A DNA stretch of 64,000 nucleotides, from the NCBI RefSeq assembly GCF_902652985.1, contig NC_047025.1, positions 39,308,001-39,372,000 on the forward strand, read 5' to 3'. Positions 30,943 through 61,327 of this stretch are shown one piece after another. The position numbers were made by a program, and so were the translations under genes. This DNA comes from Pecten maximus (taxonomy: Eukaryota). The notes under the pieces were generated by a model that saw nothing but the letters and a program-made list of their open reading frames with translations, was not told where the DNA came from and searched no databases. The number at the start of each line of letters is the position of its first letter. Positions within the stretch are counted from its first letter, which is position 1.

Positions 30943-31431
30943 CTAAACAATTGTAATATATTCTGATGAGTTAGGCTGAAATATATCAGTCATGGTATCA
31001 TTAAATACAAAAGAAACACATACATCACTGTAGTTAAGCTTCTGGTACTGTGTCATTGCCATAACTTGTAAAATATAATATTGGGAGGTACGTGCTCTTA
31101 TGTATGAAGTAAAATTTAAATCTTGAATAGATGGCACTGTTTGGATGGTCAATGAATCGGTAACACAAGGTCCGAAGTCTGTCATGTTGAACGTTACAGC
31201 ATACATACTGTAGTCTAAGCGGTACCTTGTAGCGTTCAAATTATGGCGTTCAAACACCACCGACGAATACCCTGATTCTTCCAAGGAGTTGTTCAAGCAT
31301 ATACAGTAACTAGGATAATCAAATGTGTAGTCACCTAGATAGTAAAGTTGCTGGGAATTTACAAGCACTAGTATCAACAGTGTCATTGTGAGTAGCTCTA
31401 CCCCTCCGGTAGTATTGATTAGGACTGCCAT
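30943..31431 (-). CDS. Uncharacterised secreted 4-Cys protein, paralog 1 (162 aa)
   Basis: Signal peptide, then YYLGD..YPSYCIC..SVVFERHNL..YSMYAVTFN..FGPCVTDSL..VPS..YSDVCVSF. About 7 N-glycosylation sequons. Homologous to four other ORFs in the window. Confidence 0.88.
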   Translation of the reverse strand: MAVLINTTGGVELLTMTLLILVLVNSQQLYYLGDYTFDYPSYCICLNNSLEESGYSSVVFERHNLNATRYRLDYSMYAVTFNMTDFGPCVTDSLTIQTVPSIQDLNFTSYIRARTSQYYILQVMAMTQYQKLNYSDVCVSFVFNDTMTDIFQPNSSEYITIV

Positions 31432-31619
31432 TTCTTGATTAGTTTGAATTCAATGATGATGATTAGTATGACTGATCTTCATACACAGGTTTGAATTCCT
31501 AAGTAACGGATATTTTTAACAATTCCATCATTTCTTTGAGTTCGATTCATTAGCGCGAGAAAGCATTTTTATTCCTTCACTTGCTCTCATTCGTAAGTAA
31601 TAGGAAAGGAATCCTTAAT

Positions 31620-32080
31620 CTTAAGCGTTAAATCGCTTGGTACTGCCTTCACTTGTGTGAATTCTTTAGCGATAACACAATCGGTAATCCATCCACTTCT
31701 TTGATTTTTTTTAGCAATAAATCACTTGGTAATCTTTAGCGATAAATAGATCAGCAATTATTCACTTGTTTGAATTCTTTTGCCATAAGTCACGTTGCAA
31801 TCCATTCACTTGTTTGATTTCTAAGCGTTAAAGCGATTTGTAATCCCTTCACTTGTGTGAATTCTTTAGCGATACATCGATTGGTAGTTATTCACTTGTT
31901 TGATTATTTTAGCGATAAATCGCTTGGCAATCCCTTCATTTGTTTGAATTCTTTACCGATAAATCGATCGGCAATTATTCACTTGTTTGAATTCTTTTGT
32001 GATCAATCACGTTGCAATCCATTCACTTGTTTGATTTCTTAACGTTAAAGCGATTTGTAATCCCTTCACTTGTTTGAATT
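31620..32080. repeat. Degenerate ~43-bp tandem repeat
   Basis: Recurrent TTCACTTGTTTGAATTCTTTAGCGATAAATCG. Confidence 0.75.
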
Positions 32081-32989
32081 CCTAGAGCTATAATCCTATA
32101 GGATTGTTGTTCCTTCGTCTGTAATTCTCTACATTAGTTTCACTCATCATATACATTGTACCCTGTCGGACGATACTAGCTATAGGTTGATCACGCGGTG
32201 TTGGATCCAACCCTGTATTTACATGTTACTAACACTGACAGTCGTTATTAACTCAATAGAATTAATACGTGATGTCTTCTATTGAGTAGACCTTGTTCGT
32301 CTATTAGTTTTTATCACAGCAGTAGTGTGTTAGTTTACATATCCCTGAGGAAAGTCAATAAAATATCGCGTCACTGTGGTTATAGACAATGACCCAGCCA
32401 GTCCAGGGAAGAACACAATGGCAACACGCTCATAGCAATACTCACTGATGCGTGTGTGTTTTGTTGTTTTGTATGATCCATATTCTCATCAAATTATGAC
32501 AAATTACCCGTAATTATAGTTGTTAGTTATGTTTATCGGTGAAAAACCTATACAGTGTATTTCAAAACGGTATCAATTCTGTAAATATCAAGTGTACTTT
32601 CTTTTTTGTCAAGGTTGTATACTAATTCATGTACACGTGTTTATAATTTGTTTAAACACGCATGTGGAACCAAATCGATGATTTTTCATTTTTACAAATA
32701 TTCCTGGTAAAAATACTTAGCTTATCGTACTTGGCATTCGTCTCCGCTAGAGAACACAGGTCTAGGCTTCTCTCTCTTCACAATAACTAACATCCATCCC
32801 ACCAATAGTATAGAGTCGCATTAACCCCGTTCATCCTCATCAACAGTGCTTTATACAGACGCTGTACAGGTGGCACTATGTATTGCTCTTCTATATCAAC
32901 ATTCAATATTTAATATGCTATTGGATGGTGTTATGCCAACTGTATCCGACAGTTGGCTATTTATAGAGTGGATGGCAAAATGTGTACAC

Positions 32990-33500
32990 AGTGCGTTCAC
33001 AGTCCATGGCTGGCTGACACGAAGTGTTCACAATTCGAGGGCGTTCATAGTCTATGACTGGTTGACATGAAGTGTTCATATCACAAGGCCGTTCACAGTC
33101 CATGGCTGGTTGACATGAAGTGTTCACATCACAAGGCCGTTCATAGTCCATTCCTGGTTGACATGAAGTGTTCACATTACGAGGCTTTTCCCAGTCCGTT
33201 GCTGGTAGACATGAATTATTCGCATTACGAGGCTTTTCACAGTCCATGGCTGGTTGACACGAAGTGTTCACGTAACAAGGCCCTTCACAGTCCATGGCTT
33301 GTTGACATGAAGTGTTCACATTACGAGGCTTTTCACAGTCCATGGCTGGTAGACACGAATTGTTCACATTTCGAGGGCGTTCACAGTCCATGGCAGGTTG
33401 ACAGTAAGTGTTTACATTTCGAGGGCGTTCACAGTTCAGGACTGGTTGACATGATGTTTTCACATCAGGAGGCGGTTCACATTTCATGGTTGGTTGACAT
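32990..33500. repeat. 48-bp minisatellite
   Basis: Unit TTCACAGTCCATGGCTGGTTGACATGAAGTGTTCACATTACGAGGCTT. Confidence 0.88.
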
Positions 33501-34776
33501 TAACTGATTTGATATCAAACTCTTGTTCCCCCATCACGACTTTATTTGTCCAAATTCATTTGATATCTAAACCCTTGCTCTCACCATCACGACCTTACCT
33601 GTCCCAGCTGATTTTGTCGCAAACACCAACTTTCGAGAGATGCCAGTTAATGTTAAGTTAAAGTTTTATGGTCTGCATCATTTGTTTATATGTTATTTCC
33701 TGTTAAATGACGTGATTAATGCTTGTTGATCTGGTTCTTCTGTTGTCTCCGCCTAAACTCATGTTTAAGATTGTGATTCAGCCCAGATTAGTATGGCGAA
33801 TGTCATCGTTATTTATTGGTGTTCTTTGTTGTTTTTACTGGTGTGAGAATAGAATTCAAATTAACACCAATTTCAGTGAATATCCAGATTTTTAATTATC
33901 TAATTTTTTTGTGCACCCCCTTAAGCCTCTTCATAGTTTTGTAAATAGTGTAGATATAAAACTTTGTCAAGATGAGTTTCATAATCCCCATATAGGTTTA
34001 TCTTCCTTTAGTTTCCATTAGATATGCACAGCTACGTCACAGCTACGTCAACAATATATAATTAAATCATGTACTAAACATCTAAAACTGGAATATGAAC
34101 AAACTCTGCTCGCGCCGAGTTACATCCCTGGATGATAACCAGAAAAAAAGACAGGGGCGTGTATTATTGTCTTACAGACACACGTAGACTCTGTAGGTTG
34201 TAACCCAGTTTGTGCATGCGTGTATGATATTTTATTGCGAGGCCCCTTTTACTTATAGAGTGGAGCACCGCATAAGAAATTCCCCGTAATCACATGGATG
34301 TTTTAATTGCAATTATGAAAATCTATTTATTGATTCTTACATGATATATTCATCAGGGAATACATACTCAAATTCAAGATATTTTTTATAATTTTGCCAT
34401 TATTTATATATAAAGTGGTAGTTTATTGTATAGAAAACATCATTCATGACCAGCCCCGGTTACTGAGGTCTGTTATCGTATCAAGATTTTATTGCTTGAC
34501 ATTTGTGCGTTCCACTATTACATTGTTAAAAGCTAAGCATGTGTTATTTTGTACCATCATTAAGGGAATGCTTTTTAACGAAATCCATTCATTAGCAAAT
34601 ATAAGTAATTGATGTTTAGAACTACGTAACACTAAAGTGACATTGTATAGCGATTAGAGAATCCAAAGGCAATGGAAAACATTTATTTCATTGTTTCATC
34701 AATCAACTTAAATACTAGCGGATTCCTTCATCATTAATGAAATAAATCATATATATTCACAAACAGTAATACATGC

Positions 34777-36760
34777 TGTTTTTCTGTACCAGTAACACAT
34801 GCCGCTGTTCTGTACCAGTAACACATGCCGCTGTTCTATACCAGTAACACATGACGCTGTTCTGTACTAGTAACACATGCCGCTGTTCTGTACCAGTAAC
34901 ACATGCCGCTGTTCTGTACTCAGTAACACGTGCCGCTGTTCTGTACCAGTAACACATGCCGCTGTTCTGTACTCAGTAACACGTGCCGCTGTTCTGTACC
35001 AGTAACGCATGCCGCTGTTCTGTACCAGTAACACGTGCCGCTGTTCTGTACCAGTAACACATGTCGCTGTTCTGTACCAGTAACACGTCACTGTTCTGTA
35101 CCAGTAACACATGCCGCTGTTCTGTATCAGTAACACATGCCGCTGTTCTGTACCAGTAACACATGCCGCTGTTCTGTATCAGTAACACATGCCGCTGTTC
35201 TGTACCAGTAACACATTCCGCTGTTCTGTACCAGTAACACATCCCGCTGTTCTGTACCAGTAACACATTCCGCTGTTCTATACCAGTAACACATTCCGCT
35301 GTTCTATACCAGTAACACATGCCGCTGTTCTGTACCAGTAACACATTCCGCTGTTCTGTACCAGTAACACATGCCGCTGTTCTGTACTCAGTAACACATG
35401 CCGCTGTTCTATACCAGTAACACATCCCGCTTTTCTGTACCAGTAACACATGCCGCTGTTCTGTACTCAGTAACACGTGCCGCTGTTCTGTACCAGTAAC
35501 ACATGCCGCTGTTCTGTACTCAGTAACACGTGCCGCTGTTCTGTACCAGTAACGCATGCCGCTGTTCTGTACCAGTAACACGTGCCGCTGTTCTGTACCA
35601 GTAACACATGCCGCTGTTCTGTACCAGTAACACATGCCGCTGTTCTATTACCAGTAACACATCCCGATGTTCTGTACCAGTAACACATGTCGCTGTTCTA
35701 TACCAGTAACACCTGCCCCTGTTCTGTACCAGTAACACATTCCGCTGTTCTGTACCAGTAACACATCCCGCTGTTCTGTACCAGTAACACATTCCGCTGT
35801 TCTATACCAGTAACACATTCCGCTGTTCTATACCAGTAACACATGCCGCTGTTCTGTACCAGTAACACATTCCGCTGTTCTGTACCAGTAACACATGCCG
35901 CTGTTCTGTACTCAGTAACACATGCCGCTGTTCTATACCAGTAACACATCCCGCTTTTCTGTACCAGTAACACATTCCGCTGTTCTATACCAGTAACACA
36001 TGCCGCTGTTCTGTACCAGTAACACATTCCGCTGTTCTGTACTCAGTAACACGTGCCGCTGTTCTGTACCAGTAACACATGCCGCTGTTCTGGACCAGTA
36101 ACACGTGCCGCTGTTCTGTACCAGTAACACATGCCGCTGTTCTATACCAGTAACACATGCCTCTGTTCTGTACTAGTAACACATGCCGCTGTTCTGTACC
36201 AGTAACATGCCGCTGTTCTGTACCAGTAACACATGCCGCTGTTCTGTACTAGTAACACATGCCGCTGTTCTGTACCAGTAACACATGCTGCTGTTCTGTA
36301 CTCAGTAACACATTCCGCTGTTCTGTACCAGTAACACATCCCGCTGTTCAATACCAGTAACACATGCCGCTGTTCTATACCAGTAACACATGCCGCCATT
36401 CTGTACCAGTAACACATGCCGCTGTTCTATACCAGTAACACATGCCGCTGTTCTATACCAGTAACACATGTCGCTGTTCTGTACCAGTAACACATGCCGC
36501 TGTTCTATACCAGTAACACATGCCGCCATTCTGTACCAGTAACACGTGCCGCTGTTCTATACCAGTAACACATGCCGCTGTTCTGTACTCAGTAACACAT
36601 GCCGCTGTTCTGTACCAGTAACACATGCCGCTGTTCTATACCAGTAACACATCCCGCTGTTCTGTACTAGTAACACATGCCGCTGTTCTGTACCAGTAAC
36701 ACATGCCGCCATTCTGTACCAGTAGCACATGCTGCTGTTCTGTACCAGTAACACATGTCG
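34777..36760. repeat. 26-bp minisatellite
   Basis: Unit GCTGTTCTGTACCAGTAACACATGCC. Confidence 0.95.
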
Positions 36761-37044
36761 ATATATCATCAATTAAGGCCGATTAAACAGTAACATAGGC
36801 CGCTTAATCAGTAACACATGTCGCTATATCAATAGCACAGGCCGCTATGTCAGTAACACAAACTGCTAGACACATAGGCCGGTATTTCAGTAACACACGA
36901 TACTACATTTTATATCAGTCACGCCGACTGCTATATTGGTAAACCGGTCGTAATATCAGTTCAGAAGTATGTTTTTATCATTTGTAATTTGTTGATAAGT
37001 CGTTGATTTAAATAATTCCGGTCAAGTTATGGACGAGTGACTTA

Positions 37045-37485
37045 TCAGGTTGATGTTGAATTAAGGACGTATGATACACATGCCTCGGTTAGAGATGACG
37101 CCTGCAAATGTAGAAATGCCAGCTGTTGAAGCATAGTCTGTTGTGTTTCCATTTCGGAACTGGATAAGTCCAAAATTGTCATCGCAGGGAAAGCTGTCGT
37201 CTGAATAGTGTCCGTAACACAGTAGCCTAATTGTTTATCAATGTTGAATATAACACTGTATAGATTATACTCTGCTTGGTCCTCCGTCGTGTTGAGGGTA
37301 TCTCTTGTAAATACCGCAGATCCGCCATTTTCCTCTGAAGAAGAACTGCTGCTAGAATCCTGTTCGATACATATGCAGTAACTTGGAAGACTGAACCTAC
37401 TGTCACCAAGATAGTATGTTGATGAATCTACTAGCAGGATTGATGAAAGTACCACGACGGTGACGGTATGAACGTCCAGCATCAT
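37045..37485 (-). CDS. Uncharacterised secreted 4-Cys protein, paralog 2 (146 aa)
   Basis: Signal peptide, then YYLGD..LPSYCIC..SAVFTRDTL..YNLYSVIFN..LGYCVTDTI..FPA..TEACVSY. Confidence 0.88.
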   Translation of the reverse strand: MMLDVHTVTVVVLSSILLVDSSTYYLGDSRFSLPSYCICIEQDSSSSSSSEENGGSAVFTRDTLNTTEDQAEYNLYSVIFNIDKQLGYCVTDTIQTTAFPAMTILDLSSSEMETQQTMLQQLAFLHLQASSLTEACVSYVLNSTST

Positions 37486-41953: not shown

Positions 41954-42388
41954 TTATCCCACTTTAACTGTTACATTAAACACGTGTAAGTAGGAAATAC
42001 ACACGTTTGTATAAGAGAGAGAGCGCAGTTGAGCCTCCGCCATAGCCTTCAGCATGCCGCCTATTGACGTTATGTTAATCTTCGTTATATCCACACTGTG
42101 GAGGGAAGGAAAGGATTCCAAGTCCAAGGCGTCCGCAACACAAAACCCTAACGCTGAGGAGACATTAGAGACCACACTGTACAATCGGTAGGCCGTCCCT
42201 GACGAAGTCGTGTTGAGTGTGTCCCGCTGAAACAATACCGAAGATGGTTGTCCAGGTTTATCATTCTTCAGACAAATACAGTAACTTGGGTAGCCAAGTC
42301 GTGGATCACCCAGAAAGAAATTTCCAGACGTTACAACCGCAAGAGAGAAGAGGCCGACCACCCAGGTAAGTGTTATAACCCTCTGCAT
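41954..42388 (-). CDS. Uncharacterised secreted 4-Cys protein, paralog 3 (144 aa from ATG 42388)
   Basis: MQRVITLTWVVGLFSLAVVTSG signal peptide, then FFLGD..YPSYCIC..SVLFQRDTL..YRLYSVVSN..LGFCVADAL..FPS..YTNVCISY. Confidence 0.88.
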   Translation of the reverse strand: MQRVITLTWVVGLFSLAVVTSGNFFLGDPRLGYPSYCICLKNDKPGQPSSVLFQRDTLNTTSSGTAYRLYSVVSNVSSALGFCVADALDLESFPSLHSVDITKINITSIGGMLKAMAEAQLRSLSYTNVCISYLHVFNVTVKVG

Positions 42389-45300
42389 CCTGTTGTTTCG
42401 GGAATCACGATGATATGTTATGGACACTTTTCGATTCTATGCTCTAAACAACACTCTGTCTCTCACCTGCATTCTTCTAACAATAGATCCACTGCTTTAA
42501 AACAAAATGGCGATTGTTCGAAACCTAGTGAAACCTTTCTAATAACGGGAATCTCTGATAAGAATGTTTGAGGTATCGATCTTTTTTATCCATCCCGACC
42601 TAGGGGATAGATCATACGTCATTTTCCGATATTGGGGAAAGATATTGCATGGTAATATTGACGTGTAGAATAATCTCATCAAATAAAATACCACAGGAAG
42701 TCTCAGTACATATGTTATACACACTCTGGTTTATAATCCAAAACTAAACAGAAATCTCGTAAAAATTGTCATCGCCATGAAGTGATTTAAACATTCAACT
42801 TGCAGAATGACATGCAATTTGAAACACTTACAAATATCCACAATACGTTGTGAAGCAGGTTAACCTTGCCATGAAAACGAGAACCTTCTTAAATGAAATA
42901 GTTTCTTGATATTTTATAAATCACCCAAAATAATTATATTTTTTTTTTGTAACAAAATTATCGATATCGTATCTCATACATTATAAATAAATCAATTTAA
43001 TATCAATAATGCAAAATTAAGAAGCTTTGTATGGGTGTCAAGTTGACAAGACAGGTCCAGTGATGACTTTGATATATGGTCCTACAGTAAACAGTGGTCG
43101 GGGATATAGACAGGGGTCATTCTTGGTGTGGCCGGTTCAACTATAGATAAAAAAATATCATCAGTACTATGTCTAGTGCTAGTGTTGACTTTATATGAAT
43201 TTGATGAGCTTTTGAAAAATCAAGGACAGGATATTCTTATATTTCTTAAAACGGACGTTGTATTGAATTCCTTTTCAGAGTAATTAAGATCAATCACGTT
43301 CATTAGATTTAAAAAATTCAAGCTTCAAATTCAAATGATAAAAATCATCAATTTTGAATCTCTTGATCCCGAAAATCGAGACCACATTTTAACTGTCTCC
43401 TTGATAGGTACGTGGCTATGCCTCCAAATGAAGCATCTCATTAATTGATACTTGTAATATTGCTTGATAACTCAGGAAAAGCTACCAACATATATTCCTT
43501 TTTTAGACAAAGTTAATTTTCTGTATTGTATATTTTCAGGTTACCGTTTAACTATTTAGGAGGAGCCTTTATCGTTTTATTTGAACCCTAAACATCACAA
43601 AATGCGTTTTTAGACAATGTGTTGTTACTGATTTGGCCTGGTAATCATTTCTTTCTACTACAAATCTCGGTTTATTTAAAATCAAGGTTGCGGTCGTGGT
43701 ATTGTGTACTGAAGAAGTTTTAGTATCATAAAGTGGAGTTAAAGTCATTAAAGGGTACCATGAGGGAGTCCAATCTTGAACTAATCGCGTTATTTAGAGT
43801 TATATTTACTTACAATGTATAGCAAAACTTGTCTGTATTGTTACTGCATACCTTTAACGTTGAGGCATGATAACATTTAACCGGATTCTCAACGTCATCC
43901 TATTGATTACGTTATATATATCCGTTAGACGCTGGTTGTGGTACAATATGGATTAGTGGTACTTGTTCAGATTTAAACTGTAGCTCTATCAAGGCGAGCA
44001 CTAATAAACATCCGAGACAAGTAGTATAATTCCGATAGGTGGCTAGCATTCGTCATTTAGGAAACAGGTTGTGAAAAATTACAGAGAAGGCGAAGAAAAA
44101 GAGAACTAGTCGGAAAAACACAAAATATGATTCTAGAAAAACATCATGAAGAAGGAAATATAGACAAATATAGCATAAAATTGGAAAGACGACAAATATA
44201 TCATCAAATAGACAGAAATTATTAATATAAATTTATATTCTTACAAATAACCTCAGAAAAGAAAAGATACCTCAGTAATGTTTTTGGGGTAGCACATTTA
44301 CCATAAACAGAACTCAAAATTCTTGATAATATTATTCAATATATATCTAAATAAAGATGTAGCTTTACTTAAAATCAGGAATCAAGTAGACACATGTAAT
44401 TAATCTTGGATTCTGACAACAAATATCACAAAGAAGTACTAGACCATGTTATAAACTATACACTAATAGTTTTACATCAGGAAGACAGAGCAAAATACAT
44501 GTATAATCTTGTATAAAATTGAACAAAACTGCTGGATTGAATAAATAAGTACCAAACCAGTAGTTTTACAAATAACCTAAAATACCAAGTAGAGTGAATT
44601 AAGTAGTATTAAAGCAATAGTTTCAGAAATGATAAGAAAGGGAACAAAAAGCAAATTTGAAAACGCACTGGCACATTTAACTTTAAGACCAAACACATTT
44701 ATAGGTGATATTTTGTTTGTGTATTTATGAGGACTCACGCCAACGTTGTACTCGTTAATTACTTGTAAATAACCAACATCTCCCACACCACTTAAACATG
44801 TGACATGCTAATCGTGTGTTGTCGATATCAGACTTGTTAACAATTGGTATTTCGTCCACACAAAAAATCTTAGCCAAAGGGGGACAATCGCAAGTATGTT
44901 ATCTTATGTGACTGATAATTGGATGCAGCATAAATGACGTAGCCAAATTTATGAATATTCTTCCAACTAATCCTTCCAAAACAGAATCTCCAGTTTTAAT
45001 CTTGTGTCGGCGAGAAGCTGTCCTACAGGTTGGATGATGAGCACGACATGCGAAGTTTTAATGGACTTTGGTTTGTAACAGTTTTTGGGGGCGAAGGTTT
45101 CAATTATATTATTTTCCATACTTGTTTGTAAAATCAATACATGTATAGACCATTGTAGTTATCAATGAACCAAATTCGATATGATGTAACGATTGTCAAT
45201 ATGAACACATGGCTGGCATTGTTTGTTGTTCTGTGGTTTTCTTTGAAATGAATTAGGGTGAAAATGAAAAATACCAACCTTCTATGATTCTTTTTCAGAG

Positions 45301-46947: not shown

Positions 46948-47370
46948 TTAGAATGGAACTAACAAGTAAGCTATACAGGCATCAGTGTAAGTTAACGAGG
47001 GGAAATGTAACAACGCCACAGCCCCGAACATGTCCTGTCGGGTCAGAATCGTCGTGTTATTGGTAGCCAGGGGTTTGAAGGACGGGAAATGTCCACGTTG
47101 TAAATATTCAGTGACACAGTAGCCCAGGTTAGAGTTGATACTAAATGCTATACTTAATATAGTATATGCTGTCTGAGGCACTGTTCGGTCCAAACTGTCA
47201 CGCTCAAACACTATTGAAGTTGTATTTGATTTCCTGTTTGTCTCCTGACAGATACAGTAACTTGGGTACTTGGATGTTGTATCTCCTAGATGGTAGGTTA
47301 TTGTCTCCACGCCAGGACTGACCATCAGGGTAACCCATAGGGAGACCATGGACATAGCCACGGTGTTCAT
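46948..47370 (-). CDS. Uncharacterised secreted 4-Cys protein, paralog 4 (140 aa from ATG 47370)
   Basis: Signal peptide, then YHLGD..YPSYCIC..SIVFERDSL..YTILSIAFS..LGYCVTEYL..FPSFK..YTDACIAY. Confidence 0.88.
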   Translation of the reverse strand: MNTVAMSMVSLWVTLMVSPGVETITYHLGDTTSKYPSYCICQETNRKSNTTSIVFERDSLDRTVPQTAYTILSIAFSINSNLGYCVTEYLQRGHFPSFKPLATNNTTILTRQDMFGAVALLHFPSLTYTDACIAYLLVPF

Positions 47371-47429
47371 TTTGGTCACTATACACAAATCTGGCCTAAC
47401 TAGGAGGGCATCTGAAACAAAAAGAGTAT

Positions 47430-48062: not shown

Positions 48063-49399
48063 ACCATCACCGTCGTCGTCGTCGTCGCCCTCGTCGTCGT
48101 CGTCGTTAGAAATGCTAACATGTAGAAGGATCATTGCCCTGATGACAAACTGAGTATAAACGTAACGTTGGAGTTGGTACTAAATATGTGTATGGACACT
48201 TGATATGCTGTGAGTAAATTTCGTCGTGGTTTTCACTACTAACCTTGTACCTACACATTTTACATTTCAGTCGTTTTCGATATTGCTACTAGGAAACTTT
48301 TGCAATGTGCTATGAAAAAAAGATGAAGAAAATTAAAGAAAAATAATAATAAATAAAAATTGAAGAGGAATGCTGTAATTTTCTGAATATATTACCAATA
48401 AAACATTTTTTACACGAAAACACATACATGAATGTATATCGGTATATCGGTGACTGTAATAATATGCTACTTATAAAGCTTTGCTATTGGATTGTTTTAG
48501 TATTTGTATTTAAGTCTTGGTTAAATAAACTATGAATTAAGCTGAAAGTTACCAACTCTTCCCCAACTGTAGGACGTACTTAATATATTTTGTACAGTAT
48601 AACGAATACGTGTGTGTTCTCTAAAGATTAAAGTATCAATAACTGTTAGTTGTTATCGTTAATTGTGTTGAAATATAGAATTATATATAGATTCTATTTT
48701 ATCCTTTGTATAAAAATCTGTAATAATGATAGTTTAAAACGAACTTACCTTCTGAAACATTCCGACTTTGTGAGGAACGCGTCATACGTTCACGTACCTG
48801 TAGTACAAATTGGTATGGATGAAGATAACATTGTGTGAGATTTCAACGCGTTTGATCTTTGAATGGCGGTTGCTGTGTTCACGATGTTACAAATTGGCTC
48901 GTGTCCACCTAACAACTTCTCTAGAACTACCCAAGTCACAAAGGACCTTTATGCATTATCTGTCACGTGTCCTTCCGCCACTATTTACGCTTATAACCAG
49001 GACTCCATTATTTTGTCTGCTCGAAGACATTAATCAGATGCAACGAATATGCTATAAATACAAAATGAAAGATACTGGAATTCGAGGCAGATTCCAGTTC
49101 TAATTGTGTTTTATCGATCTACAATGGACTGGAAATCTTGTCAAATTATAAACTAGAAAGATGGAAGGTCTTCTCCATAATCATTTAGATAATATTTGCA
49201 TATTGATATTATCACATAACATGTCCTACCTCATAAATCGAGGAACATATATTACAAAAGCAGATTTTAAACTAGTTATGCAATGTATTGGTGTATAAAC
49301 AACCATATATAGTCTGTGTGGTTGAAGTCCATATCGACTACTGTGTAAACAATTTGGATGGTAAATCCAGTCGCTAGGAACCTTAGTGTGTAAATAATA

Positions 49400-52300
49400 A
49401 CAGTAAACGATACCGAGATATTTGATCTGTATTAAACACGGTGTATCAGTAATAACAGTTAACGACACTTAGATATCTGATCTGTATTAAACATGATGTA
49501 TCAGTAATAACAGTTAACGACACTTAGATATCTGATATGTATTAAACATGATGTATCAGTAATAACAGTTAACGACACTTAGATATCTGATCTGTATTAA
49601 ACATGATGTATCAGTAATAACAGTAAATGACACTTAGATATCTGATCTGTATTAAACACGGTGCATCAGTAATAACAGTTAACGACACTTAGATATCTGA
49701 TCTGTATTAAACATGATGTATCAGTAATAACAGTTAACGACACTTAGATATCTGATCGGTATTAAACATGATGTATCAGTAATAACAGTTAACGACACTT
49801 AGATATCTGATCTGTATTAAACATGATGTATCAGTAACAACAGTTAACGACACTTAGATATCTGATCTGTATTAAACATGATGTATCAGTAATAACAGTA
49901 AATGACACTTAGATATCTGATCTGTATTAAACACGGTGTATCAGTAATAACAGTTAACGACACTTAGATATCTGATCTGTATTAAACATGATGTATCAGT
50001 AATAACAGTTAACGACACTTAGATATCTGATCTGTATTAAACATGATGTATCAGTAATAACAGTTAACGACACTTAGATATCTGACATGTATTAAACATG
50101 ATGTATCAGTAATAACAATTAACGACACTTAGATATCTGATCTGTATTAAACATGATGTATCAGTAATAACAGTTAACGACACTTAGATATCTGATCTGT
50201 ATTAAACATGATGTATCAGTAATAACAGTTAACGACACTTAGATATCTGATCTGTATTAAACATGATGTATCAGTAATAACAGTTAACGACACTTAGATA
50301 TCTGATCTGTATTAAACATGATGTATCAGTAATAACAGTTAACGACACTTAGATATCTGATCTGTATTAAACATGATGTATCAGTAATAACAGTAAACGA
50401 CACTTAGATATCTGATCTGTATTAAACATGATGTATCAGTAATAACAGTTAACGACACTTAGATATCTGATCTGTATTAAACATGATGTATCAGTTATAA
50501 CAGTTAACGATACCGAGGTATCTGATCTGTATTAAACATGATGTATCAGTAATAACAGTAAACGACACTTAGATATCTGATCTGTATTAAACATGATGTA
50601 TCAGTAATAACAGTTAACGACACTTAGATATCTGATCTGTATTAAACATGATGTATCAGTAATAACAGTTAACGACACTTAGATATCTGACATGTATTAA
50701 ACATGATGTATCAGTAATAACAGTTAACGACACTTAGATATCTGATCTGTATTAAACATGATGTATCAGTAATAACAGTAAACGACACTTAGATATCTGA
50801 TCTGTATTAAACATGATGTATCAGTAATAACAGTTAACGACACTTAGATATCTTATCTGTATTAAACACGGTGTATCAGTAATAACAGTAAACGACACTT
50901 AGATATCTGATCTGTATTAAACATGATGTATCAGTAATAACAGTTAACGACACTTAGATATCTGATCTGTATTAAACATGATGTATCAGTAATAACAGTT
51001 AACGACACTTAGATATCTGATCTGTATTAAACATGATGTATCAGTAATAACAGTAAACGACACTTAGATATCTGATCTGTATTAAACATGATGTATCAGT
51101 AATAACAGTTAACGACACTTAGATATCTGATCTGTATTTAACACGGTGTATCAGTAATAACAGTAAACGACACTTAGATATCTGATCTGTATCAAACATG
51201 ATGTATCAGTAATAACAGTTAACGATACCGAGGTATCTGATCTGTATTAAACATGATGTATCAGTAATAACAGTTAACGACACTTAGATATCTGATCTGT
51301 ATTAAACATGATGTATCAGTAATAACAGTTAACGGCACTTAGATATCTGATCTGTATTAAACATGATGTATCAGTAATAACAGTTAACGACACTTAGATA
51401 TCTTATCTGTATTAAACATGATGTATCAGTAATAACAGTTAACGACACTTAGATATCTGATCTGTATTAAACATGATGTATCAGTAATAACAGTTAACGA
51501 CACTTAGATATCTGATCTGTATTAAACATGATGTATCAGTAATAACAGTTAACGACACTTAGATATCTGATCTGTATTAAACATGATGTATCGGTAATAA
51601 CAGTAAACGACACTTAGATATCTGATCTGTATTAAACATGATGTATCAGTAATAACAGTTAACGACACTTAGATATCTGATCCGTATTAAACATGATGTA
51701 TCAGTAATAACAGTTAACGACACTTAGATATCTGATCTGTATTAAACATGATGTATCAGTAATAGCAGTTAACGACACTTAGATATCTGATCTGTATTAA
51801 ACTTGATGTATCAGTAATAACAGTTAACGACACTTAGATATCTGATCTGTATTAAACATGATGTATCAGTAATAACAGTAAACGACACTTAGATATCTGA
51901 TCTGTATTAAACATGATGTATCAGTTATAACAGTTAACGATACCGAGGTATCTGATCTGTATTAAACATGATGTATCAGTAATAACAGTAAACGACACTT
52001 AGATATCTGATCTGTATTAAACATGATGTATCAGTAATAACAGTTAACGACACTTAGATATCTGATCTGTATTAAACATGATGTATCAGTAATAACAGTT
52101 AACGACACTTAGATATCTGACATGTATTAAACATGATGTATCAGTAATAACAGTTAACGACACTTAGATATCTGATCTGTATTAAACATGATGTATCAGT
52201 AATAACAGTTAACGACACTTAGATATCTGATCTGTATTAAACATGATGTATCAGTAATAACAGTTAACGACACTTAGATATCTGATCTGTATTAAACATG

Positions 52301-54165
52301 ATGTATCGGTAATAACAGTTAACGACACTTAGATATCTGATCTGTATTAAACATGATGTATCAGTAATAACAGTTAACGACACTTAGATATCTTATCTGT
52401 ATTAAACACGGTGTATCAGTAATAACAGTAAACGACACTTAGATATCTGATCTGTATTAAACATGATGTATCAGTAATAACAGTTAACGACACTTAGATA
52501 TCTGATCTGTATTAAACATGATGTATCAGTAATAACAGTTAACGACACTTAGATATCTGATCTGTATTAAACATGATGTATCAGTAATAACAGTAAACGA
52601 CACTTAGATATCTGATCTGTATTAAACATGATGTATCAGTAATAACAGTTAACGACACTTAGATATCTGATCTGTATTTAACACGGTGTATCAGTAATAA
52701 CAGTAAACGACACTTAGATATCTGATCTGTATCAAACATGATGTATCAGTAATAACAGTTAACGATACCGAGGTATCTGATCTGTATTAAACATGATGTA
52801 TCAGTAATAACAGTTAACGACACTTAGATATCTGATCTGTATTAAACATGATGTATCAGTAATAACAGTTAACGGCACTTAGATATCTGATCTGTATTAA
52901 ACATGATGTATCAGTAATAACAGTTAACGACACTTAGATATCTTATCTGTATTAAACATGATGTATCAGTAATAACAGTTAACGACACTTAGATATCTGA
53001 TCTGTATTAAACATAATGTATCAGTAATAACAGTTAACGACACTTAGATATCTGATCTGTATTAAACATGATGTATCAGTAATAACAGTTAACGACACTT
53101 AGATATCTGATCTGTATTAAACATGATGTATCGGTAATAACAGTAAACGACACTTAGATATCTGATCTGTATTAAACATGATGTATCAGTAATAACAGTT
53201 AACGACACTTAGATATCTGATCCGTATTAAACATGATGTATCAGTAATAACAGTTAACGACACTTAGATATCTGATCTGTATTAAACATGATGTATCAGT
53301 AATAGCAGTTAACGACACTTAGATATCTGATCTGTATTAAACTTGATGTATCAGTAATAACAGTTAACGACACTTAGATATCTGATCTGTATTAAACATG
53401 ATGTATCAGTAATAACAGTAAACGACACTTAGATATCTGATCTGTATTAAACATGATGTATCAGTTATAACAGTTAACGATACCGAGGTATCTGATCTGT
53501 ATTAAACATGATGTATCAGTAATAACAGTAAACGACACTTAGATATCTGATCTGTATTAAACATGATGTATCAGTAATAACAGTTAACGACACTTAGATA
53601 TCTGATCTGTATTAAACATGATGTATCAGTAATAACAGTTAACGACACTTAGATATCTGACATGTATTAAACATGATGTATCAGTAATAACAGTTAACGA
53701 CACTTAGATATCTGATCTGTATTAAACATGATGTATCAGTAATAACAGTTAACGACACTTAGATATCTGATCTGTATTAAACATGATGTATCAGTAATAA
53801 CAGTTAACGACACTTAGATATCTGATCTGTATTAAACATGATGTATCGGTAATAACAGTTAACGATACCGAGATATCTGATCTGTATTAAACATGATGTA
53901 TCAGTAATAACAGTTAACGACACTTAGATATCTGATCTGTATTAAACATGATGTATCGGTAATAACAGTTAACGACACTTAGATATCTGATCTGTATTAA
54001 ACATGATGTATCAGTAATAACAGTTAACGACACTTAGATATCTGATCTGTATTAAACATGATGTATCAGTAATAACAGTTAACGACACTTAGATATCTGA
54101 TCTGTATTAAACATGATGTATCAGTAATAACAGTAAACGATACCGAGGTATCTGATGCATATTAA
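49400..54165. repeat. 55-bp satellite array with a 1540-bp (28-mer) internal duplication
   Basis: Unit AGATATCTGATCTGTATTAAACATGATGTATCAGTAATAACAGTTAACGACACTT. Diagnostic variants recur at +1540. Confidence 0.96.
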
Positions 54166-55206
54166 AGAAAACAAGATATTCGAACCTGCTCCAGAAGACA
54201 TCCCTTATCAAACGTGGTTAAATTCCAATCGTAACTACAAGAACGTCTGATTGGTTCCCGAGTTGATGATTTAACTACATGTAGTTCTAGCCAAAGTGTC
54301 TGTTCAGGAGTTCGGTAAAGTGTCCGTTCATGTGAGCGGTAAAGTAAAGTTTGGTATCTATCCTAGACCAAATCAAACCTTGATGTATACTACAAGGATT
54401 GATATATGTGTTTCTCTAGCCTTTGTGACAACATGCTATACAACCACAGTTATAAAATTTTTGTTGACTTTCAGTGCGTCAATATTAACTGGACATTAGG
54501 CTAGGTAAGGAACGTGTTCTGTGATCTGGCCAATCTGACGTCTGTATGTTTAATAATTATAAATATCTTTGTTACAGCTGGCCAGTAAGTCCCTATAACG
54601 CAGCCTTTAATATACTCAACATAGAGGGCCATTCTACACCTTACTTTTCAATGTAAACCTATCCTACAACGTAAATAAACCATGAAGTCCTAGACACACC
54701 TATATCGAACACTGTTTATCATTCTGATTATAAAATGGTTTTTAATTTTATGTAAACAGAGATTTGCTTGCTGTTTATTTTCCTAGTGGTTCTATAAGGT
54801 TGAGAAAATTAATAGCGTTCTGAAAGGACGTGTGAAGTGAGGCCATCGACAGTATATCTTGAGACGTATTTCCTCGATTCAGTATATATTTAATCATTAG
54901 GTTTGTATTAACTTTGCGTTAAAAACAGTTAAGAAAACTTAAAATTTTGCATTGGGTACTTCTTCATAGAATAAAAAATAAACAACTGAATCGTTTAACT
55001 TTCTGAGGCAAATAGTGTGGAACTTGACAATCGGGCCGAGTAAAGGTGATTTATAACATGAAATTCGGGCCGAGTGTTATGTGCTCGTTGACATTCCAGT
55101 AAATTATAACGGATATACAACTAGTAAGAAGTAGTTCTCATTTAATTTACTTTTAGCTATAAATGTAACTTTGGTGCTCTATTTGCAGCGGCTCTATTTC
55201 TCAAAA

Positions 55207-55435: not shown

Positions 55436-55519
55436 TTACAACGAATATTGTGCAATACCCCAGTTTGTTAAAGCGTCGGCCACTTAACCTCAAATGAAGA
55501 TCCATAACCCTTGATCCCT

Positions 55520-58150
55520 ATACAATACGTTAACACACGATTATAGATACATACCCCTACCCAATACGTTAACATTATAGATACTTACCCCTACCCAATA
55601 CGTTAACACTATAGATGCATACCCCTACCCAATACGTTAACACACGACTATATAGATACATACCCCTACCCAATACGTTAACACACGACTATAGATACAT
55701 ACCCCTACCCAATACGTTAACACACGACTATAGATACATACCCCTACCCAATACGTTAACACAAGACTATATAGATACATACCCCTACCCAATACGTTAA
55801 CACACGACTATAGATACATACCCCTACCCAATACGTTAACACTATAGATACATACCCCTACCCAATACGTTAACACTATAGATACATACCCCTACCCAAT
55901 ACGTTAACACACCACTAAAGATACATACCCCTACCCAATACGTTAACACTATAGATAGATACCCCTACCCAATACGTTAACACTATAGATACATACCCCT
56001 ACCCAATACGTTAACACACGACTATATAGATACATACCCCTACCCAATACGTTAACACACGACTATAGATACATACCCCTACCCAATACGTTAACACTAT
56101 AGATGCATACCCCTACCCAATACGTTAACACACGACTATAGATACATACCCCTACCCAATACGTTAACACACGACTATATATACATACCCCTACCCAATA
56201 CGTTAACACACGACTATAGATACATACCCCAACCCAATACGTTAACACTATAGATACCTACCCCTACCCAATACGTTAACACTATAGATACATACCCCTA
56301 CCCAATACGTTAACACACCACTAAAGATACATACCCCTACCCAATACGTTAACACTATAGATACATACCCCTACCCAATAGGTTAACACACGACTATAGA
56401 TAGATACCCCTACCCAATACGTTAACACACGACTATAGATACATACCCCTACCCAATACGTTAACACACGACTATATAGATACATACCCCTACCCAATAC
56501 GTTAACACTATAGATACTTACCCCTACCCAATACGTTAACACACGACTATAGATACATACCTCTAACCAATACGTTAACACACGACTATAGATGCATACC
56601 CCTACCCAATACGTTAACACACCACTAAAGATACATACCCCTACCCAATACGTTAACACTATACGTACATACCCCTACCCAATAGGTTAACACACGACTA
56701 TAGATACATACCCCTACCCAATACGTTAACACTATACGTACATACCCCTACCCAATAGGTTAACACACGACTATAGATACATACCCCTACCCAATACGTT
56801 AACACTATAGATACATACCCCTACCCAATACGTTAACACACGACTATAGATACATACCCCTACCCAATACGTTAACACTATAGATACATACCCCTACCCA
56901 ATACGTTAACACTATAGACACATACCCCTACCCAATACGTTAACACACGACTATAGATACATACCCCTACCCAATACGTTAACACTATAGATACATACCC
57001 CTACCCAATACGTTAACACTATAGACACATACCCCTACCCAATACGTTAACACACGACTATAGATACATACCCCTACCCAATACGTTAACCCATCACTAT
57101 AGATACATACCCCTACCCAATACGTTAACACACGACTATAGATACATACCCCTACCCAATACGTTAACACTATAGATACAATTGTACATACCTACACAAT
57201 ACGTTAACACACGACTATATATACATACCCCTACCCAATACGTTAACACTATAGATACTTACCCCTACCCAATACGTTAACACACGACTATATATACATA
57301 CCCCTACCCAATACAATGTACGTTAACACTATAGATGCAATTGTACATACCTACACAATACGTTAACACACGACTATAGATACATACCCCTACCCAATAC
57401 GTTAACACACTACTATAGATACATACCCCTACCCAATACGCTAACGCTATATATACATACCCCTACCCAATACGTTAACACACGATTATAGATACATACC
57501 CCTACCCAATACGTTAACACACGACTATAGATACATACCCCTACCCAATACGTTAACACACGACTATAGATACAGACCCTTACCCAATACGTTAACACAC
57601 GACTATAGATACATACCCCTACCCAATACGTTAACACTATAGATACATACCCCTACCCAATACGTTAACACTATAGATACATACCCCTACCCAATACGTT
57701 AACACACGACTATAGATACATACCCCTACCCAATACGTTAACACACTACTATAGATACATACCCCTACCCAATACGTTAACACTATAGATACATACCCCT
57801 ACCCAATACGTTAACACTATAGATACATACCCCTACCCAATACGTTAACACACGACTATAGATACATACCCCTACCCAATACGTTAACACTATAGATACC
57901 TACCCCTACCCAATACGTTAACACTATAGATACATACCCCTACCCAATACGTTAACACTATAGATACGACCCCTACCCAATACGTTAACACTATAGATAC
58001 ATACCCCTACCCAATACGTTAACACTATAGATACATACCCCTACCCAATACGTTAACACACGACTGTAGATACATACCCCTACCCAATACGTTAACACTA
58101 TAGATACAGACCCCTTCCCAATACGTTAACACACGACTATAGATACATAC
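55520..58150. repeat. 34/39-bp minisatellite
   Basis: Unit CTATAGATACATACCCCTACCCAATACGTTAACA(CACGA). Confidence 0.95.
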
Positions 58151-58675
58151 CTTGTGCGATGCAGCTTCATACTGTTACAGAGTATTTATCAGTTGCTTTA
58201 TGTCTAACATGAATTGGAATAAACAGAAGTGTCAATATATGGTCGGCACCAGTACAATTAATCTGATGAATGGATAGACTCGCCAGTTTTAAACACTCTC
58301 ATTCAGGTTGATAAAGCGCTATGAATGACTTTCCGACATTTTCCTTTCACGACGAAAATTACCATGTCTCTTCACTGGCCCCGAGCTGTGGTTATTTTGC
58401 TCTAGTCCAATTATAAAGATTTCCACAATATACACGGTGTTCTATGAAGAAAAAAAACTTCAAGTTAAAGAGTGGGGTCAGACTTAACTTAAGTACACGA
58501 GAGCGTTATATACGGCACGAATGGTCACAACAATCGTTAATTAAGTAAATTGATTTTCCCAGACAAGATCAATGGCTTGGCACAGAACACACACACCAAT
58601 ACGTCTATGATGTTTGTATTTGGGTAAAAGTATGCTCAAGAGGCAATTATACATCACATAGTACACTAGTCTGTT

Positions 58676-58836
58676 CTACCTGTATGGTTACCTCACTTTA
58701 CCTGTATGTTTACCTCGCTTTACCTGTATGTTTACCTCGCTTTACCTGTATGGTTACCTCGCTTTACCTGTATGTTTACCTCGCTTTACCTGTATGTTTA
58801 CCTCGCTTTACCTGTTTGTTCACCTCGCTTTACCTG
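58676..58836. repeat. 22-bp minisatellite
   Basis: Unit TTTACCTGTATGTTTACCTCGC. Confidence 0.88.
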
Positions 58837-59929: not shown

Positions 59930-60678
59930 GTGGAATAAATTCCATACAACATAGTTATGAGTGTAAGATAAATTCCAAACCGCATAGTTACGAGTGAAAT
60001 ATAAAGTTAATACTGCATAGTCATGAGTGTAAGATAAATTACATACAAATGTACTGCATAGTTACGAGTTAAAGATAAATTCCAAGCAACATAGTTACGA
60101 GTGAAAGAAAAAATTAATACAACAAAGTTACGAGTGTAAGATAAATTCAATACTGCATAGTTACGAGTGAAAGATGAATTTAATACTGCATAGTCATGAG
60201 TGTAAGATAAATTCCATACAACACAGTCAAGAGTGTAAGATAAATTCCATACAACACAGTCAAGAGTGTAAGATAAATTCCATACAACACAGTCAAGAGT
60301 GTAAGATACATTCCATACAACACAGTCAAGAGTGTAAGATAAATTCAATACTACATAGTCAAGAGTGTAAGATAAATTCAATATTACATAGTCAATAGTG
60401 TAAGAAAAATTCAATACTACATAGTCAAGAGTGTAAGATAAATTCCATACAACACAGTCAAGAGTGTAAGATAAATTAAATACAACACAGTCAAGAGTGT
60501 AAGATAAATTCAATACTACACAGTCAAGAGTGTAAGATAAATTCCATACAACACAGTCAAGAGTGTAAGATAAATTCCATACAACACAGTCAAGAGTGTA
60601 AGATAAATTCCATACAACACAGTCAAGAGTGTAAGATAAATTCCATACTACACAGTCAAGAGTGTAAGATAAACTCCG
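59930..60678. repeat. 33-bp minisatellite
   Basis: Unit GAGTGTAAGATAAATTCCATACAACACAGTCAA. Confidence 0.92.
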
Positions 60679-60771
60679 TGTTATAACCAGGCAGAAAGGT
60701 GATCAACTTTTAATAAATACACTAAATATATAACCATGAATGTTATATGTTGTATCGGTAATATGTGGTTA

Positions 60772-60914
60772 CTGTAAACCAACTTATTTTCGCGTGCGAT
60801 TAATCTTCGCGTGTATTGCGGATGATTAAATATTCGTGAAATTAATCACTGCGAAAAAGTCGTTAGTCATGAAAATGTGAAATTAAGACGCCGCAAAAAT
60901 AAGTTGGTTTACAG
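60772..60914. mobile_element. 143-bp MITE with TA target duplication
   Basis: TA|CTGTAAACCAACTTATTTTCGCG ... CGCAAAAATAAGTTGGTTTACAG|TA. Confidence 0.85.
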
Positions 60915-60928
60915 TATATTGAACGCGT

Positions 60929-61327
60929 TCAGTACGGATAAAGTATGTACGCTATACATGCGTCTGTGTATGACAGAGTCGTAAACTGTATTGACGACAC
61001 TGCCCGGAACAGGTCCTGGTGTGTTTCTAAATCTGTCGTATCTACGTCCTTAAATGATGGGAATCGTTCTCTTAATAATCTTTCCACCACACAGTATCCC
61101 AGGTCGGCGTCAATGCTGAACGTGACACTAAACATAGTGTATGACAAGGCGGGGGTCACTCCGCTTAATGTGTCGGTCTCGTGAACTATGGACGCCGTAT
61201 TACCGGAAGTACTGGTCACCTGACAGATACAGTAGCTCGGGAACGGAAATTGCGTTGTTCCTAAGTATGTTGCGGGCTCCACTGTCGAACATAACACCAC
61301 CACCGCTATAATAAGAAAGTTGACCAT
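60929..61327 (-). CDS. Uncharacterised secreted 4-Cys protein, paralog 5 (132 aa)
   Basis: MVNFLIIAVVVLCSTVEP signal peptide, then TYLG..FPSYCIC..SIVHETDTL..YTMFSVTFS..LGYCVVERL..FPSFK..YTDACIAY. Confidence 0.88.
   Translation of the reverse strand: MVNFLIIAVVVLCSTVEPATYLGTTQFPFPSYCICQVTSTSGNTASIVHETDTLSGVTPALSYTMFSVTFSIDADLGYCVVERLLRERFPSFKDVDTTDLETHQDLFRAVSSIQFTTLSYTDACIAYILYPY

What the first reader, a model, noticed from the sequence alone, without database searches (positions are those of the whole stretch)
30943..61327. Tandem array of five genes for an unrecognised family of small secreted four-cysteine proteins
Seen in sequence: five co-oriented minus-strand ORFs of 132-162 aa (31431-30943, 37485-37045, 42388-41954, 47370-46948, 61327-60929). 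Each is intact, has an uninterrupted CDS and begins with a signal peptide. All share one colinear signature: (Y/F/H)LG-x5-PSYCIC-[variable loop]-SxxF/HxR/TDxL-x8-YxxxSVxFN/S-x3-4-LGxCVxDxL-x4-FPS-...-YTDAC(I/V)(S/A)Y. Four Cys are invariant: an N-terminal CxC plus two singles. Paralogs are strongly diverged outside the motifs (4 and 5 are closest), yet none has a stop or frameshift, which implies old duplication and purifying selection. Paralogs 1-4 carry N-glycosylation sequons. Established knowledge: the Cys spacing does not fit Spaetzle/IL-17 cystine knots (CxC is C-terminal), CXC chemokines (much shorter spacing), MD-2/ML domains or defensins. Inference: a compact two-disulfide alpha/beta domain acting as a ligand, cytokine-like factor, co-receptor or hetero-oligomeric secreted complex.
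Basis: partly seen in the sequence, partly recalled or inferred. Interest (0 to 1): 0.88.

Follow-up and report, generated by a model that had tools for sequence, protein, structure and literature searches.

The report
Scallop secreted mini-proteins inside Toll-receptor cluster
Five neighbouring king-scallop genes encode a previously undescribed family of small secreted four-cysteine proteins that lie between two Toll-like receptor genes and probably arose from the front end of such a receptor, which makes them candidate soluble immune factors, though nothing about their function has been tested.

Summary
Five intact, co-oriented minus-strand ORFs of 132-162 aa share one colinear signature and four invariant cysteines. 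They are the only copies in the 918-Mb genome, which looks like Pecten maximus. The family is very narrow. A profile search of 1.84 billion representative proteins found five clusters: one NCBI "uncharacterized" P. maximus protein and four unnamed SRA-assembly proteins. There is no Pfam hit and no paper. AlphaFold gives a confident model (pLDDT 86) with no structural match in the PDB (best Z 3.7).

- **Location.** The array lies between two same-strand Toll-like receptor (TLR) genes. An intact one sits 2.6 kb downstream of paralog 1. A frameshifted one sits about 14.6 kb upstream of paralog 5.
- **Likely origin.** The family profile aligns colinearly with the N-terminal LRR1-4 region of that TLR clade (hhalign E 3.4e-5). 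None of 400 column shuffles came near the score. Other LRR windows and 20 other TLRs of the same genome scored at background.

My best reading is a lineage-restricted secreted family born by partial duplication of a TLR 5' end. It has since lost the LRR consensus and probably refolded. An extracellular immune role is inferred only.

The parts
30943..31431 (-). Paralog 1: 162 aa, the most diverged member, with 8 N-glycosylation sequons and a C-terminal extension. It lies 2.6 kb upstream (in gene orientation) of the intact TLR.
37045..37485 (-). Paralog 2: 146 aa, with an acidic poly-Ser loop after the CxC (mature pI 4.05). Ortholog-like P0005 is 72% identical.
41954..42388 (-). Paralog 3: 144 aa from the ATG at 42388 (the open frame runs on to a GTG at 42427). 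Ortholog-like P0003 is 73% identical and P0006 is 57% identical.
46948..47411 (-). Paralog 4, coding exon (exon 2). Acceptor AG at 47413-47412, internal ATG at 47370, stop at 46948-46950. It equals NCBI 'uncharacterized protein LOC117337935 isoform X2' (P0001).
54184..54201 (-). Paralog 4, end of the 5' exon: ATG TCT TCT GGA GCA G followed by donor GT. Joined to 47411 it gives MSSGADALLV..., exactly the P0001 N-terminus. The 6.8-kb intron holds a 55-bp x 87 satellite.
60929..61327 (-). Paralog 5: 132 aa, no sequons. A GTTTCAG|ATG acceptor-like site 66 nt upstream of the ATG resembles the proven acceptor of paralog 4.
26319..28310 (-). TLR-A: an intact single-ORF Toll-like receptor of 663 aa from MDILLY (signal peptide, LRRNT, LRRs, LRRCT, TM, TIR). 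It is co-oriented with the array. Its residues 58-111 are the best match of the family profile among 22 full-length TLRs, and it is 67% identical to Mizuhopecten yessoensis 'toll-like receptor 2'.

Best explanation
These are five real genes for a lineage-restricted family of small secreted, mostly N-glycosylated proteins. Each has a signal peptide and a domain of about 110-135 aa with four invariant cysteines, which I infer form two disulfides. The array lies inside a Toll-like receptor cluster, in the order (minus strand, 5' to 3') frameshifted TLR-B, paralogs 5-4-3-2-1, intact TLR-A. The family most likely began as a partial tandem duplicate of the 5' end of a TLR of the TLR-A clade, covering the signal peptide, the CxC of the LRRNT cap and LRR1-4. 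It then duplicated in place before the species carrying the homologues split. Three of the four invariant cysteines have counterparts in the TLR: the LRRNT CxC and the Cys at the Asn position of LRR2. The canonical LRR periodicity has been lost. AlphaFold predicts a compact sheet-plus-helix domain rather than a solenoid, so the fragment seems to have been remodelled into a self-standing disulfide-braced module. Inferred, not shown: the proteins act outside the cell in immune recognition or regulation, for example as soluble binders or decoys for whatever the N-terminal patch of the parental receptor contacts.
For: Genes are real and constrained:
- Five intact homologous ORFs, against 0.54 expected by chance.
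- They are the only copies in the genome.
- pN is below a saturated pS.
- Ortholog-like proteins at 72-88% identity group with individual paralogs, so the duplications predate those splits.
- Paralog 4 matches an NCBI spliced model exactly.

Narrow distribution: five clusters among 1.84 billion representatives, no Pfam hit, no paper.

TLR context:
- TLR-A has a TIR domain at E 1.6e-21 plus LRRs.
- TLR-B is 39% identical to TLR-A over 509 aa and lies 14.6 kb beyond paralog 5.
- The genome has at least 93 TIR matches in 918 Mb, so adjacency on both sides is unlikely by chance.

Homology to the TLR N-terminus:
- First untuned test against full-length TLR-A: E 0.0027.
- Against a five-TLR N-terminal profile: Prob 72%, E 3.4e-5, 89 columns.
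- 400 query-column shuffles: mean 11.9, max 20.5, against an observed 32.8-35.5.
- Only the N-terminal window of the TLR scores about 30; all other LRR windows score 8-12.
- Two subfamilies hit independently in the same register.
- Among 22 full-length TLRs the adjacent TLR-A is top at 28.3, against a best of 20.2 for the 20 other own-genome TLRs. The first 200 aa of its clade-mate L012 score 34.2.
- Summed Smith-Waterman scores rank TLR-A and L012 first; single pairs reach z 6.4.
Against: - Identity to the TLR is only about 13-25%, and the full 1.84-billion-protein HMM search did not recover any TLR.
- The Mizuhopecten ortholog of TLR-A scores within the null range as a single sequence (18.2).
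- No Pfam LRR model matches, and the LRR consensus motif is not enriched over shuffles.
- Both AlphaFold models lack any LRR-like structural match. The homology therefore requires a change of fold, or the models (built from 10 sequences) are wrong.
- There is no direct expression evidence and no functional evidence. The TLR-binding prediction gave no verdict.
- Known TLR ligands and co-receptors, such as Spaetzle and MD-2, are to my knowledge not linked to their receptors, so linkage does not itself imply interaction.
Confidence: 0.55

Rival explanations
1. The family is an orphan secreted family unrelated to TLRs. On this view the profile similarity reflects shared composition, sequons and strand propensity, and the position inside a TLR cluster is coincidental. 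Its function could be anything extracellular, such as reproduction, mucus, shell or byssus.
For: There are no Pfam LRR hits, no LRR motif enrichment and no LRR structural match. HHalign probability is only 60-72%. The Mizuhopecten ortholog scores within the null range as a single sequence. Acidic Ser- or Asn-rich loops in paralog 2 and P0004 resemble matrix proteins.
Against: The similarity is colinear over about 90 residues and specific to one region of one TLR clade that includes the neighbouring gene. It is absent from 400 shuffles, from the reversed sequence, from other LRR windows and from 20 other TLRs. It recurs in the same register for separate subfamilies.
Confidence: 0.27
2. The proteins are dedicated partners of the flanking TLR, acting as an MD-2-like co-receptor, a Spaetzle-like ligand or a soluble antagonist, and are co-regulated with it.
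For: Tight same-strand linkage with TLR-A (2.6 kb) and a second TLR copy on the other side. The proteins are small, secreted and disulfide-bonded, as MD-2 and Spaetzle are (established knowledge).
Against: There is no sequence or fold match to ML-domain or cystine-knot proteins. The complex prediction gave no verdict, which counts neither way. Linkage of receptor and ligand has no precedent that I know of for TLRs.
Confidence: 0.12
3. The ORFs are decaying TLR 5' fragments or non-functional relics, or they are alternative first exons spliced onto TLR-A rather than stand-alone genes.
For: TLR-B next door is frameshifted, so this locus does hold decaying TLR copies. No RNA evidence was obtained here.
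Against: All five ORFs are intact despite saturated synonymous divergence. The C-terminal motif just before the stop is conserved in ten sequences. The NCBI model for paralog 4 ends at that stop. Homologues elsewhere keep the same length and the same cysteines.
Confidence: 0.04

Closest known systems
Soluble TLR forms (fish TLR5S, mammalian sTLR2 and sTLR4 splice or shed forms; from my own knowledge)
   Same: They are secreted proteins that derive from a TLR gene and lack the transmembrane helix and TIR domain. They are thought to bind ligand or receptor outside the cell as decoys or amplifiers.
   Different: Those forms keep all or most of the LRR horseshoe and are recognised at once as LRR proteins. 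Here only about 110 residues remain, matching LRRNT-LRR4. The LRR consensus is lost, a new disulfide pattern is fixed and the predicted fold is not a solenoid. The family has also expanded to five genes.
LRR-only proteins of scallops and shrimp (for example the CfLRRop proteins and LvCD14L discussed in PMC10178686; PMC5877582 was returned by the same search but not opened)
   Same: They are small secreted immune-type proteins of invertebrates built from LRR material without other domains, proposed as pattern-recognition or Toll-pathway regulators.
   Different: Those carry several canonical LRR motifs that domain databases detect. This family is invisible to Pfam LRR models, and I found no paper describing it.
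MD-2 / ML-domain co-receptors
   Same: They are secreted disulfide-bonded proteins of about 140-160 aa that work with a TLR ectodomain.
   Different: MD-2 is a beta-cup ML domain. No ML Pfam hit and no structural match was found, and the cysteine pattern differs.
The N-terminal cap and first LRRs of V-type (single cysteine cluster) molluscan TLRs such as M. yessoensis 'toll-like receptor 2' (P0008)
   Same: Same order of signal peptide, CxC, an LRR1-like S.VF.RD.L..T segment, an LRR2-like L(G/D)YC(V/N).D.(L/I)....F segment, and a last (D/N)A.I.Y strand. Profile E is 3.4e-5.
   Different: The family lacks the first and fourth LRRNT cysteines and about 13 residues of the cap. It gains a C-terminal cysteine and stops after about LRR4. 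It has no further LRRs, LRRCT, TM or TIR.

Membership tests
Leucine-rich repeat (LRR) proteins | Tandem repeats that fit the LxxLxLxxNxL consensus and are detected by LRR profile models | tested here: not met
   No LRR family for any of the five proteins even at E <= 10. The consensus regex is no more frequent than in shuffles.
Leucine-rich repeat (LRR) proteins | Curved solenoid fold | tested here: not met
   Two AlphaFold models (pLDDT 86 and 69) give three long strands, a helix and a last strand. No LRR chain appears among the structural matches, and the best Z is 3.7 and 3.3. Caveat: each alignment had only 10 sequences.
Descendant of a TLR ectodomain N-terminus (homology, not membership of TLRs) | Significant, colinear, region-specific sequence similarity to LRRNT-LRR4 of a TLR | tested here: met
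   hhalign E 3.4e-5 and Prob 72%. None of 400 shuffles reached it. Only the N-terminal window scores above background. TLR-A (28.3) and L012 (34.2) stand above 20 other TLRs, whose best is 20.2. The level of evidence is remote homology, not proof.
Toll-like receptors | Transmembrane helix plus cytoplasmic TIR domain | tested here: not met
   The ORFs stop after 132-162 aa with no TM or TIR. They are not TLRs.
MD-2-related lipid-recognition (ML) domain | ML-domain profile match and beta-cup fold | tested here: not met
   No Pfam hit, no PDB sequence hit and no structural hit.
Spaetzle / cystine-knot cytokines | Cystine-knot fold with its six-cysteine pattern | tested here: not met
   Only four cysteines, at 14, 16, about 60 and about 107. 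No Pfam or structural match.
Tctex-type dynein light chain | Significant profile match | tested here: not met
   It is the only PDB sequence hit, at E 0.29. It is absent from the structural matches. A signal peptide is also at odds with a cytoplasmic dynein subunit.
Secreted proteins | Cleavable N-terminal signal peptide | tested here: inconclusive
   A hydrophobic h-region is present in all five and in all homologues, but no signal-peptide predictor was available. The NCBI start for paralog 4 adds 19 residues ahead of it.

The most novel reading that the evidence does not exclude
A TLR 5' fragment (cap plus four repeats) escaped the solenoid architecture. It evolved a new two-disulfide alpha/beta fold with no counterpart among solved structures and expanded into a five-gene family of soluble modulators. 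These modulators act on the Toll pathway of the flanking receptor. This would be a documented case of birth of a new fold and a new immune-factor family from a receptor fragment.
Probability: 0.2. Interest if true: 0.85.

Novelty: new variant of a known kind. Interest (0 to 1): 0.62.

Why it matters
Bivalves have the largest TLR repertoires known (PMC10279657), yet almost nothing is known about the extracellular partners or regulators of these receptors. A conserved, secreted family that sits inside a TLR cluster and appears to descend from the receptor's own ligand-facing N-terminus gives a concrete set of candidate soluble regulators or recognition factors. There are only five genes to test. 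It is also a tractable example of how a so-called orphan gene family, and possibly a new fold, can arise from a piece of an existing repeat protein. The disulfide map, the structure and the binding partners can all be tested directly with recombinant protein.

Tried and rejected
- Pfam on all five proteins found nothing relevant.
- ESM Atlas, run twice, returned only low-recognition or unrelated clusters.
- PDB sequence search gave Tctex at E 0.29, which I rejected.
- Foldseek against PDB and BFVD found nothing at E <= 0.001.
- The exhaustive VIA-align search on both models gave best hits to ATP-grasp subdomains at Z 3.3-3.7, below any meaningful level.
- Literature searches for the LOC identifier, neighbouring LOC numbers and the peptide motifs found nothing relevant.
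- The bivalve TLR survey does not mention such genes.
- More copies: a profile search of the whole genome at E <= 10, and tblastn of the flanks, found only the five.
- Conserved non-coding sequence between paralogs: none.
- I considered derivation from the LRRCT cap, which also has CxC...C...C, but hhalign placed the match in the N-terminal LRRs, not the LRRCT.
- I considered complementation of an N-terminally truncated TLR-B. TLR-B is simply frameshifted and its N-terminal LRRs are present in other frames.
- Complex prediction of the TLR-A ectodomain with paralog 5 gave no answer, with no support and no evidence against.
- dN/dS between paralogs cannot be used because dS is saturated. Ortholog DNA could not be fetched.
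As a result, the species and the RNA or DNA nature of the Logan homologues are unknown.


Full report
**1. What is there**

The window is part of contig C11 of a 918-Mb genome. One encoded protein is identical to an NCBI Pecten maximus entry, so this is king-scallop DNA or very close to it.

They align colinearly at 27-51% pairwise identity. Seventeen columns are invariant, among them PSYCIC, the cysteine of LG(Y/F)CV and the cysteine of the C-terminal (A/V)C(I/V)(S/A)(Y/F) motif. In locally shuffled copies of the window, 0.54 ATG-ORFs of 130 aa or more are expected.

Profile searches of the whole genome, even at E <= 10, find these five copies and nothing else. tblastn of the flanks adds none.

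Synonymous differences between all pairs are saturated (pS 0.63-0.87), while non-synonymous differences are lower (pN 0.35-0.48). No non-coding similarity survives between the units. The duplications are therefore old, and the frames have been kept open by selection.

**2. Gene structure**

P0001, NCBI "uncharacterized protein LOC117337935 isoform X2", is paralog 4 with the extra N-terminus MSSGADALLVRPDLCIVTK. The window reads ...DALLVRPDLCIVTKMNTV... only after a TTTCAG acceptor. The pattern ATG-TCT-TCT-GGA-GCA-G|GT occurs once in the window, at 54184-54201 on the minus strand.

Joining 54184 to 47411 reproduces P0001 exactly. The gene therefore has a short 5' exon and a 6.8-kb intron that contains a 55-bp x 87 satellite. 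Paralog 5 has a very similar GTTTCAG|ATG site upstream of its start.

Whether translation of paralog 4 begins at the upstream ATG (context GGGATGT) or at the internal one is open. Either way, a hydrophobic segment precedes the conserved domain.

**3. Distribution**

- A profile search of 1.84 billion representative proteins found five clusters, all at E < 1e-30, and nothing weaker.
- Word-indexed searches of 5.8 billion proteins found the same few.
- Only P0001 carries a name. P0002-P0006 come from Logan assemblies of unnamed runs.
- A tree groups P0005 with paralog 2, P0002 with paralog 4 (sister to 5), and P0003 and P0006 with paralog 3, with good support. Paralog 1 sits on a long branch. 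The paralogs therefore predate the splits between these species.
- All ten mature sequences have exactly four cysteines at equivalent positions. Mature pI ranges from 4.0 to 8.7. A C-terminal sequon is shared by seven of the ten.
- The Mizuhopecten proteome is in the database, because its TLR was found, yet it holds no annotated member of the family.

**4. Fold**

With the ten-sequence alignment, AlphaFold gives pLDDT 86.3 and pTM 0.79 for paralog 5. The model has strands at 12-19, 26-33 and 44-52, a helix at 84-98 and a last strand at 103-112. Paralog 3 gives the same order of elements at lower confidence (pLDDT 69).

Foldseek finds nothing in PDB or BFVD. An exhaustive alignment to 48,161 PDB representatives gives a best Z of 3.7 and 3.3, and both models hit the same ATP-grasp subdomains. 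That is well under the level at which unrelated models usually find something. Either the fold is unusual or the shallow alignment misleads the predictor. I could not read coordinates, so the disulfide pairing is inferred only.

**5. The neighbourhood**

An intact 663-aa Toll-like receptor, TLR-A, lies 2.6 kb downstream of paralog 1 on the same strand. It has a signal peptide, LRRNT, LRRs, LRRCT, a TM helix and a TIR domain (TIR E 1.6e-21). It is 67% identical to M. yessoensis "toll-like receptor 2".

A genome-wide TIR search gave at least 93 matches. One of them lies about 12 kb beyond the right end of the window. Fetching that DNA showed a second TLR, TLR-B, on the same strand, 39% identical to TLR-A over 509 residues. 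Its N-terminal LRRs lie in other reading frames, so it is frameshifted.

On the minus strand the order is therefore TLR-B, then paralogs 5, 4, 3, 2, 1, then TLR-A. With about one TIR match per 10 Mb, lying between two of them is not expected by chance.

A C1q-domain gene lies further downstream. Its signal and coiled-coil exon is at 4008-4478, and its C1q exon is just left of the window.

**6. Relationship to the TLR**

Because of the adjacency, I compared the family profile with full-length TLR-A. The only hit was to residues 70-121 of the 673-aa ORF translation, at E 0.0027. I then ran further tests:

- **Deeper TLR profile.** I built an N-terminal TLR alignment from TLR-A, the Mizuhopecten ortholog and three own-genome TLRs found with the TLR-A N-terminus. 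Against it the family gives E 7.2e-5 over 129 columns with signal peptides. In that alignment the family CxC sits on the LRRNT CxC. It gives E 3.4e-5 (Prob 72%) over 89 columns with mature parts only.
- **Shuffle and reversal controls.** 400 shuffles of the family columns gave mean 11.9, sd 2.4 and max 20.5, against an observed 32.8-35.5. The reversed template gave 7.7.
- **Region specificity.** Sliding 150-column windows along TLR-A/P0008 score about 30 only at the N-terminus and 8-12 everywhere else. This is not generic LRR similarity.
- **Independent subfamilies.** Subfamilies (4, 5, P0002) and (3, P0003, P0006) each hit the L012/L013 TLR N-terminus in the same register, at E 1.4e-3 and 1.7e-3. 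The pairings are LGYC with LDYC and DACIAY with DAGIEY.
- **Other real TLRs.** Twenty other full-length TLRs of this genome score at most 20.2. TLR-A scores 28.3, and the first 200 aa of L012 score 34.2.
- **Pairwise scores.** Summed Smith-Waterman scores rank TLR-A and L012 first (461 and 459, against 339-403 for the rest). Single pairs reach z 5.4-6.4.

Against this stand several points:
- Identity is low.
- The Mizuhopecten ortholog alone scores within the null range.
- Pfam LRR models see nothing.
- The LRR consensus is not enriched.
- The predicted fold is not a solenoid.

I put the probability of true descent from a TLR 5' portion at about 0.7.

**7. How it most likely works**

*Shown:*
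- A conserved, narrowly distributed gene family with N-terminal hydrophobic leaders and four fixed cysteines.
- A location inside a TLR cluster.
- Region-specific similarity to the N-terminus of the neighbouring TLR clade.

*Inferred:*
- The proteins are secreted, glycosylated and braced by two disulfides.
- They began as a partial duplicate of a TLR front end. That duplicate lost cap cysteines 1 and 4 and about 13 cap residues, kept the CxC and the LRR2 cysteine, gained a C-terminal cysteine, and was remodelled.
- They act extracellularly in immune recognition or regulation.

The single complex prediction I was allowed (TLR-A ectodomain with paralog 5) returned no verdict and counts neither way. 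I did not resend it, so no reads could be laid.

**8. Novelty and verdict**

I found no paper and no database family for these proteins. Soluble TLR derivatives and LRR-only proteins are known kinds. This would be an extreme variant: a fragment of about 110 residues that no longer looks like an LRR and has become a five-gene family.

The "unrecognised family" reading is partly right. "Without relatives" is probably wrong. The functional guesses remain open.

Noticed in passing
L009:1934-3893 (= G000:C11:39383934-39385893, about 14.6 kb beyond paralog 5 on the same strand): A second TLR (TLR-B), 39% identical to TLR-A over residues 178-672 of the TLR-A ORF. Its upstream LRRs (Pfam LRR_8) and an LRRNT-like piece lie in other reading frames, so it carries at least one frameshift. 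It is probably a pseudogene, or there is an assembly error.
   Followed up: partly
window 4008-4478 (-) and L010:9292-9726 (-): A signal peptide plus coiled-coil ORF (weak ANG-1-like hit, below the Pfam cut-off), followed about 4.3 kb downstream by a C1q-domain ORF (PF00386, E 1.2e-18). Together these are probably one C1q-domain-containing immune-type gene next to the TLR cluster. A similar coiled-coil ORF lies at 7957-8535 (+).
   Followed up: partly
window 49395-54156, inside the 5' intron of paralog 4: A 55-bp satellite of about 87 copies at 95% identity fills most of the 6.8-kb intron. Other long arrays separate the genes: 26 bp x 76 at 34764-36757, 39 bp x 71 at 55516-58151, 33 bp x 22 at 59935-60677 and 44 bp x 36 at 62370-64000. 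Several of them create long spurious ORFs.
   Followed up: no
window 704-1723 (+): An intact-looking Tc1/mariner-type transposase ORF of 339 aa (DDE_3 and HTH_Tnp_Tc3_2 domains).
   Followed up: no
window 26319-28310 (-), around TLR-A residue 115: TLR-A lacks about 19 residues (roughly one LRR) that are present in its Mizuhopecten yessoensis ortholog P0008. Overall identity is 67%.
   Followed up: no
L012 (G000:C11:8553392-8556817): The TLR whose N-terminus best matches the family profile (score 34.2) is split over two reading frames (385 aa and 286 aa ORFs). Either it has an intron or it is also damaged.
   Followed up: no
P0002 (Logan assembly, species unknown): This close relative of paralog 4 (88% identity in the mature part) has a quite different leader. 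It reads on for 19 residues past the position of the P. maximus stop codon.
   Followed up: no
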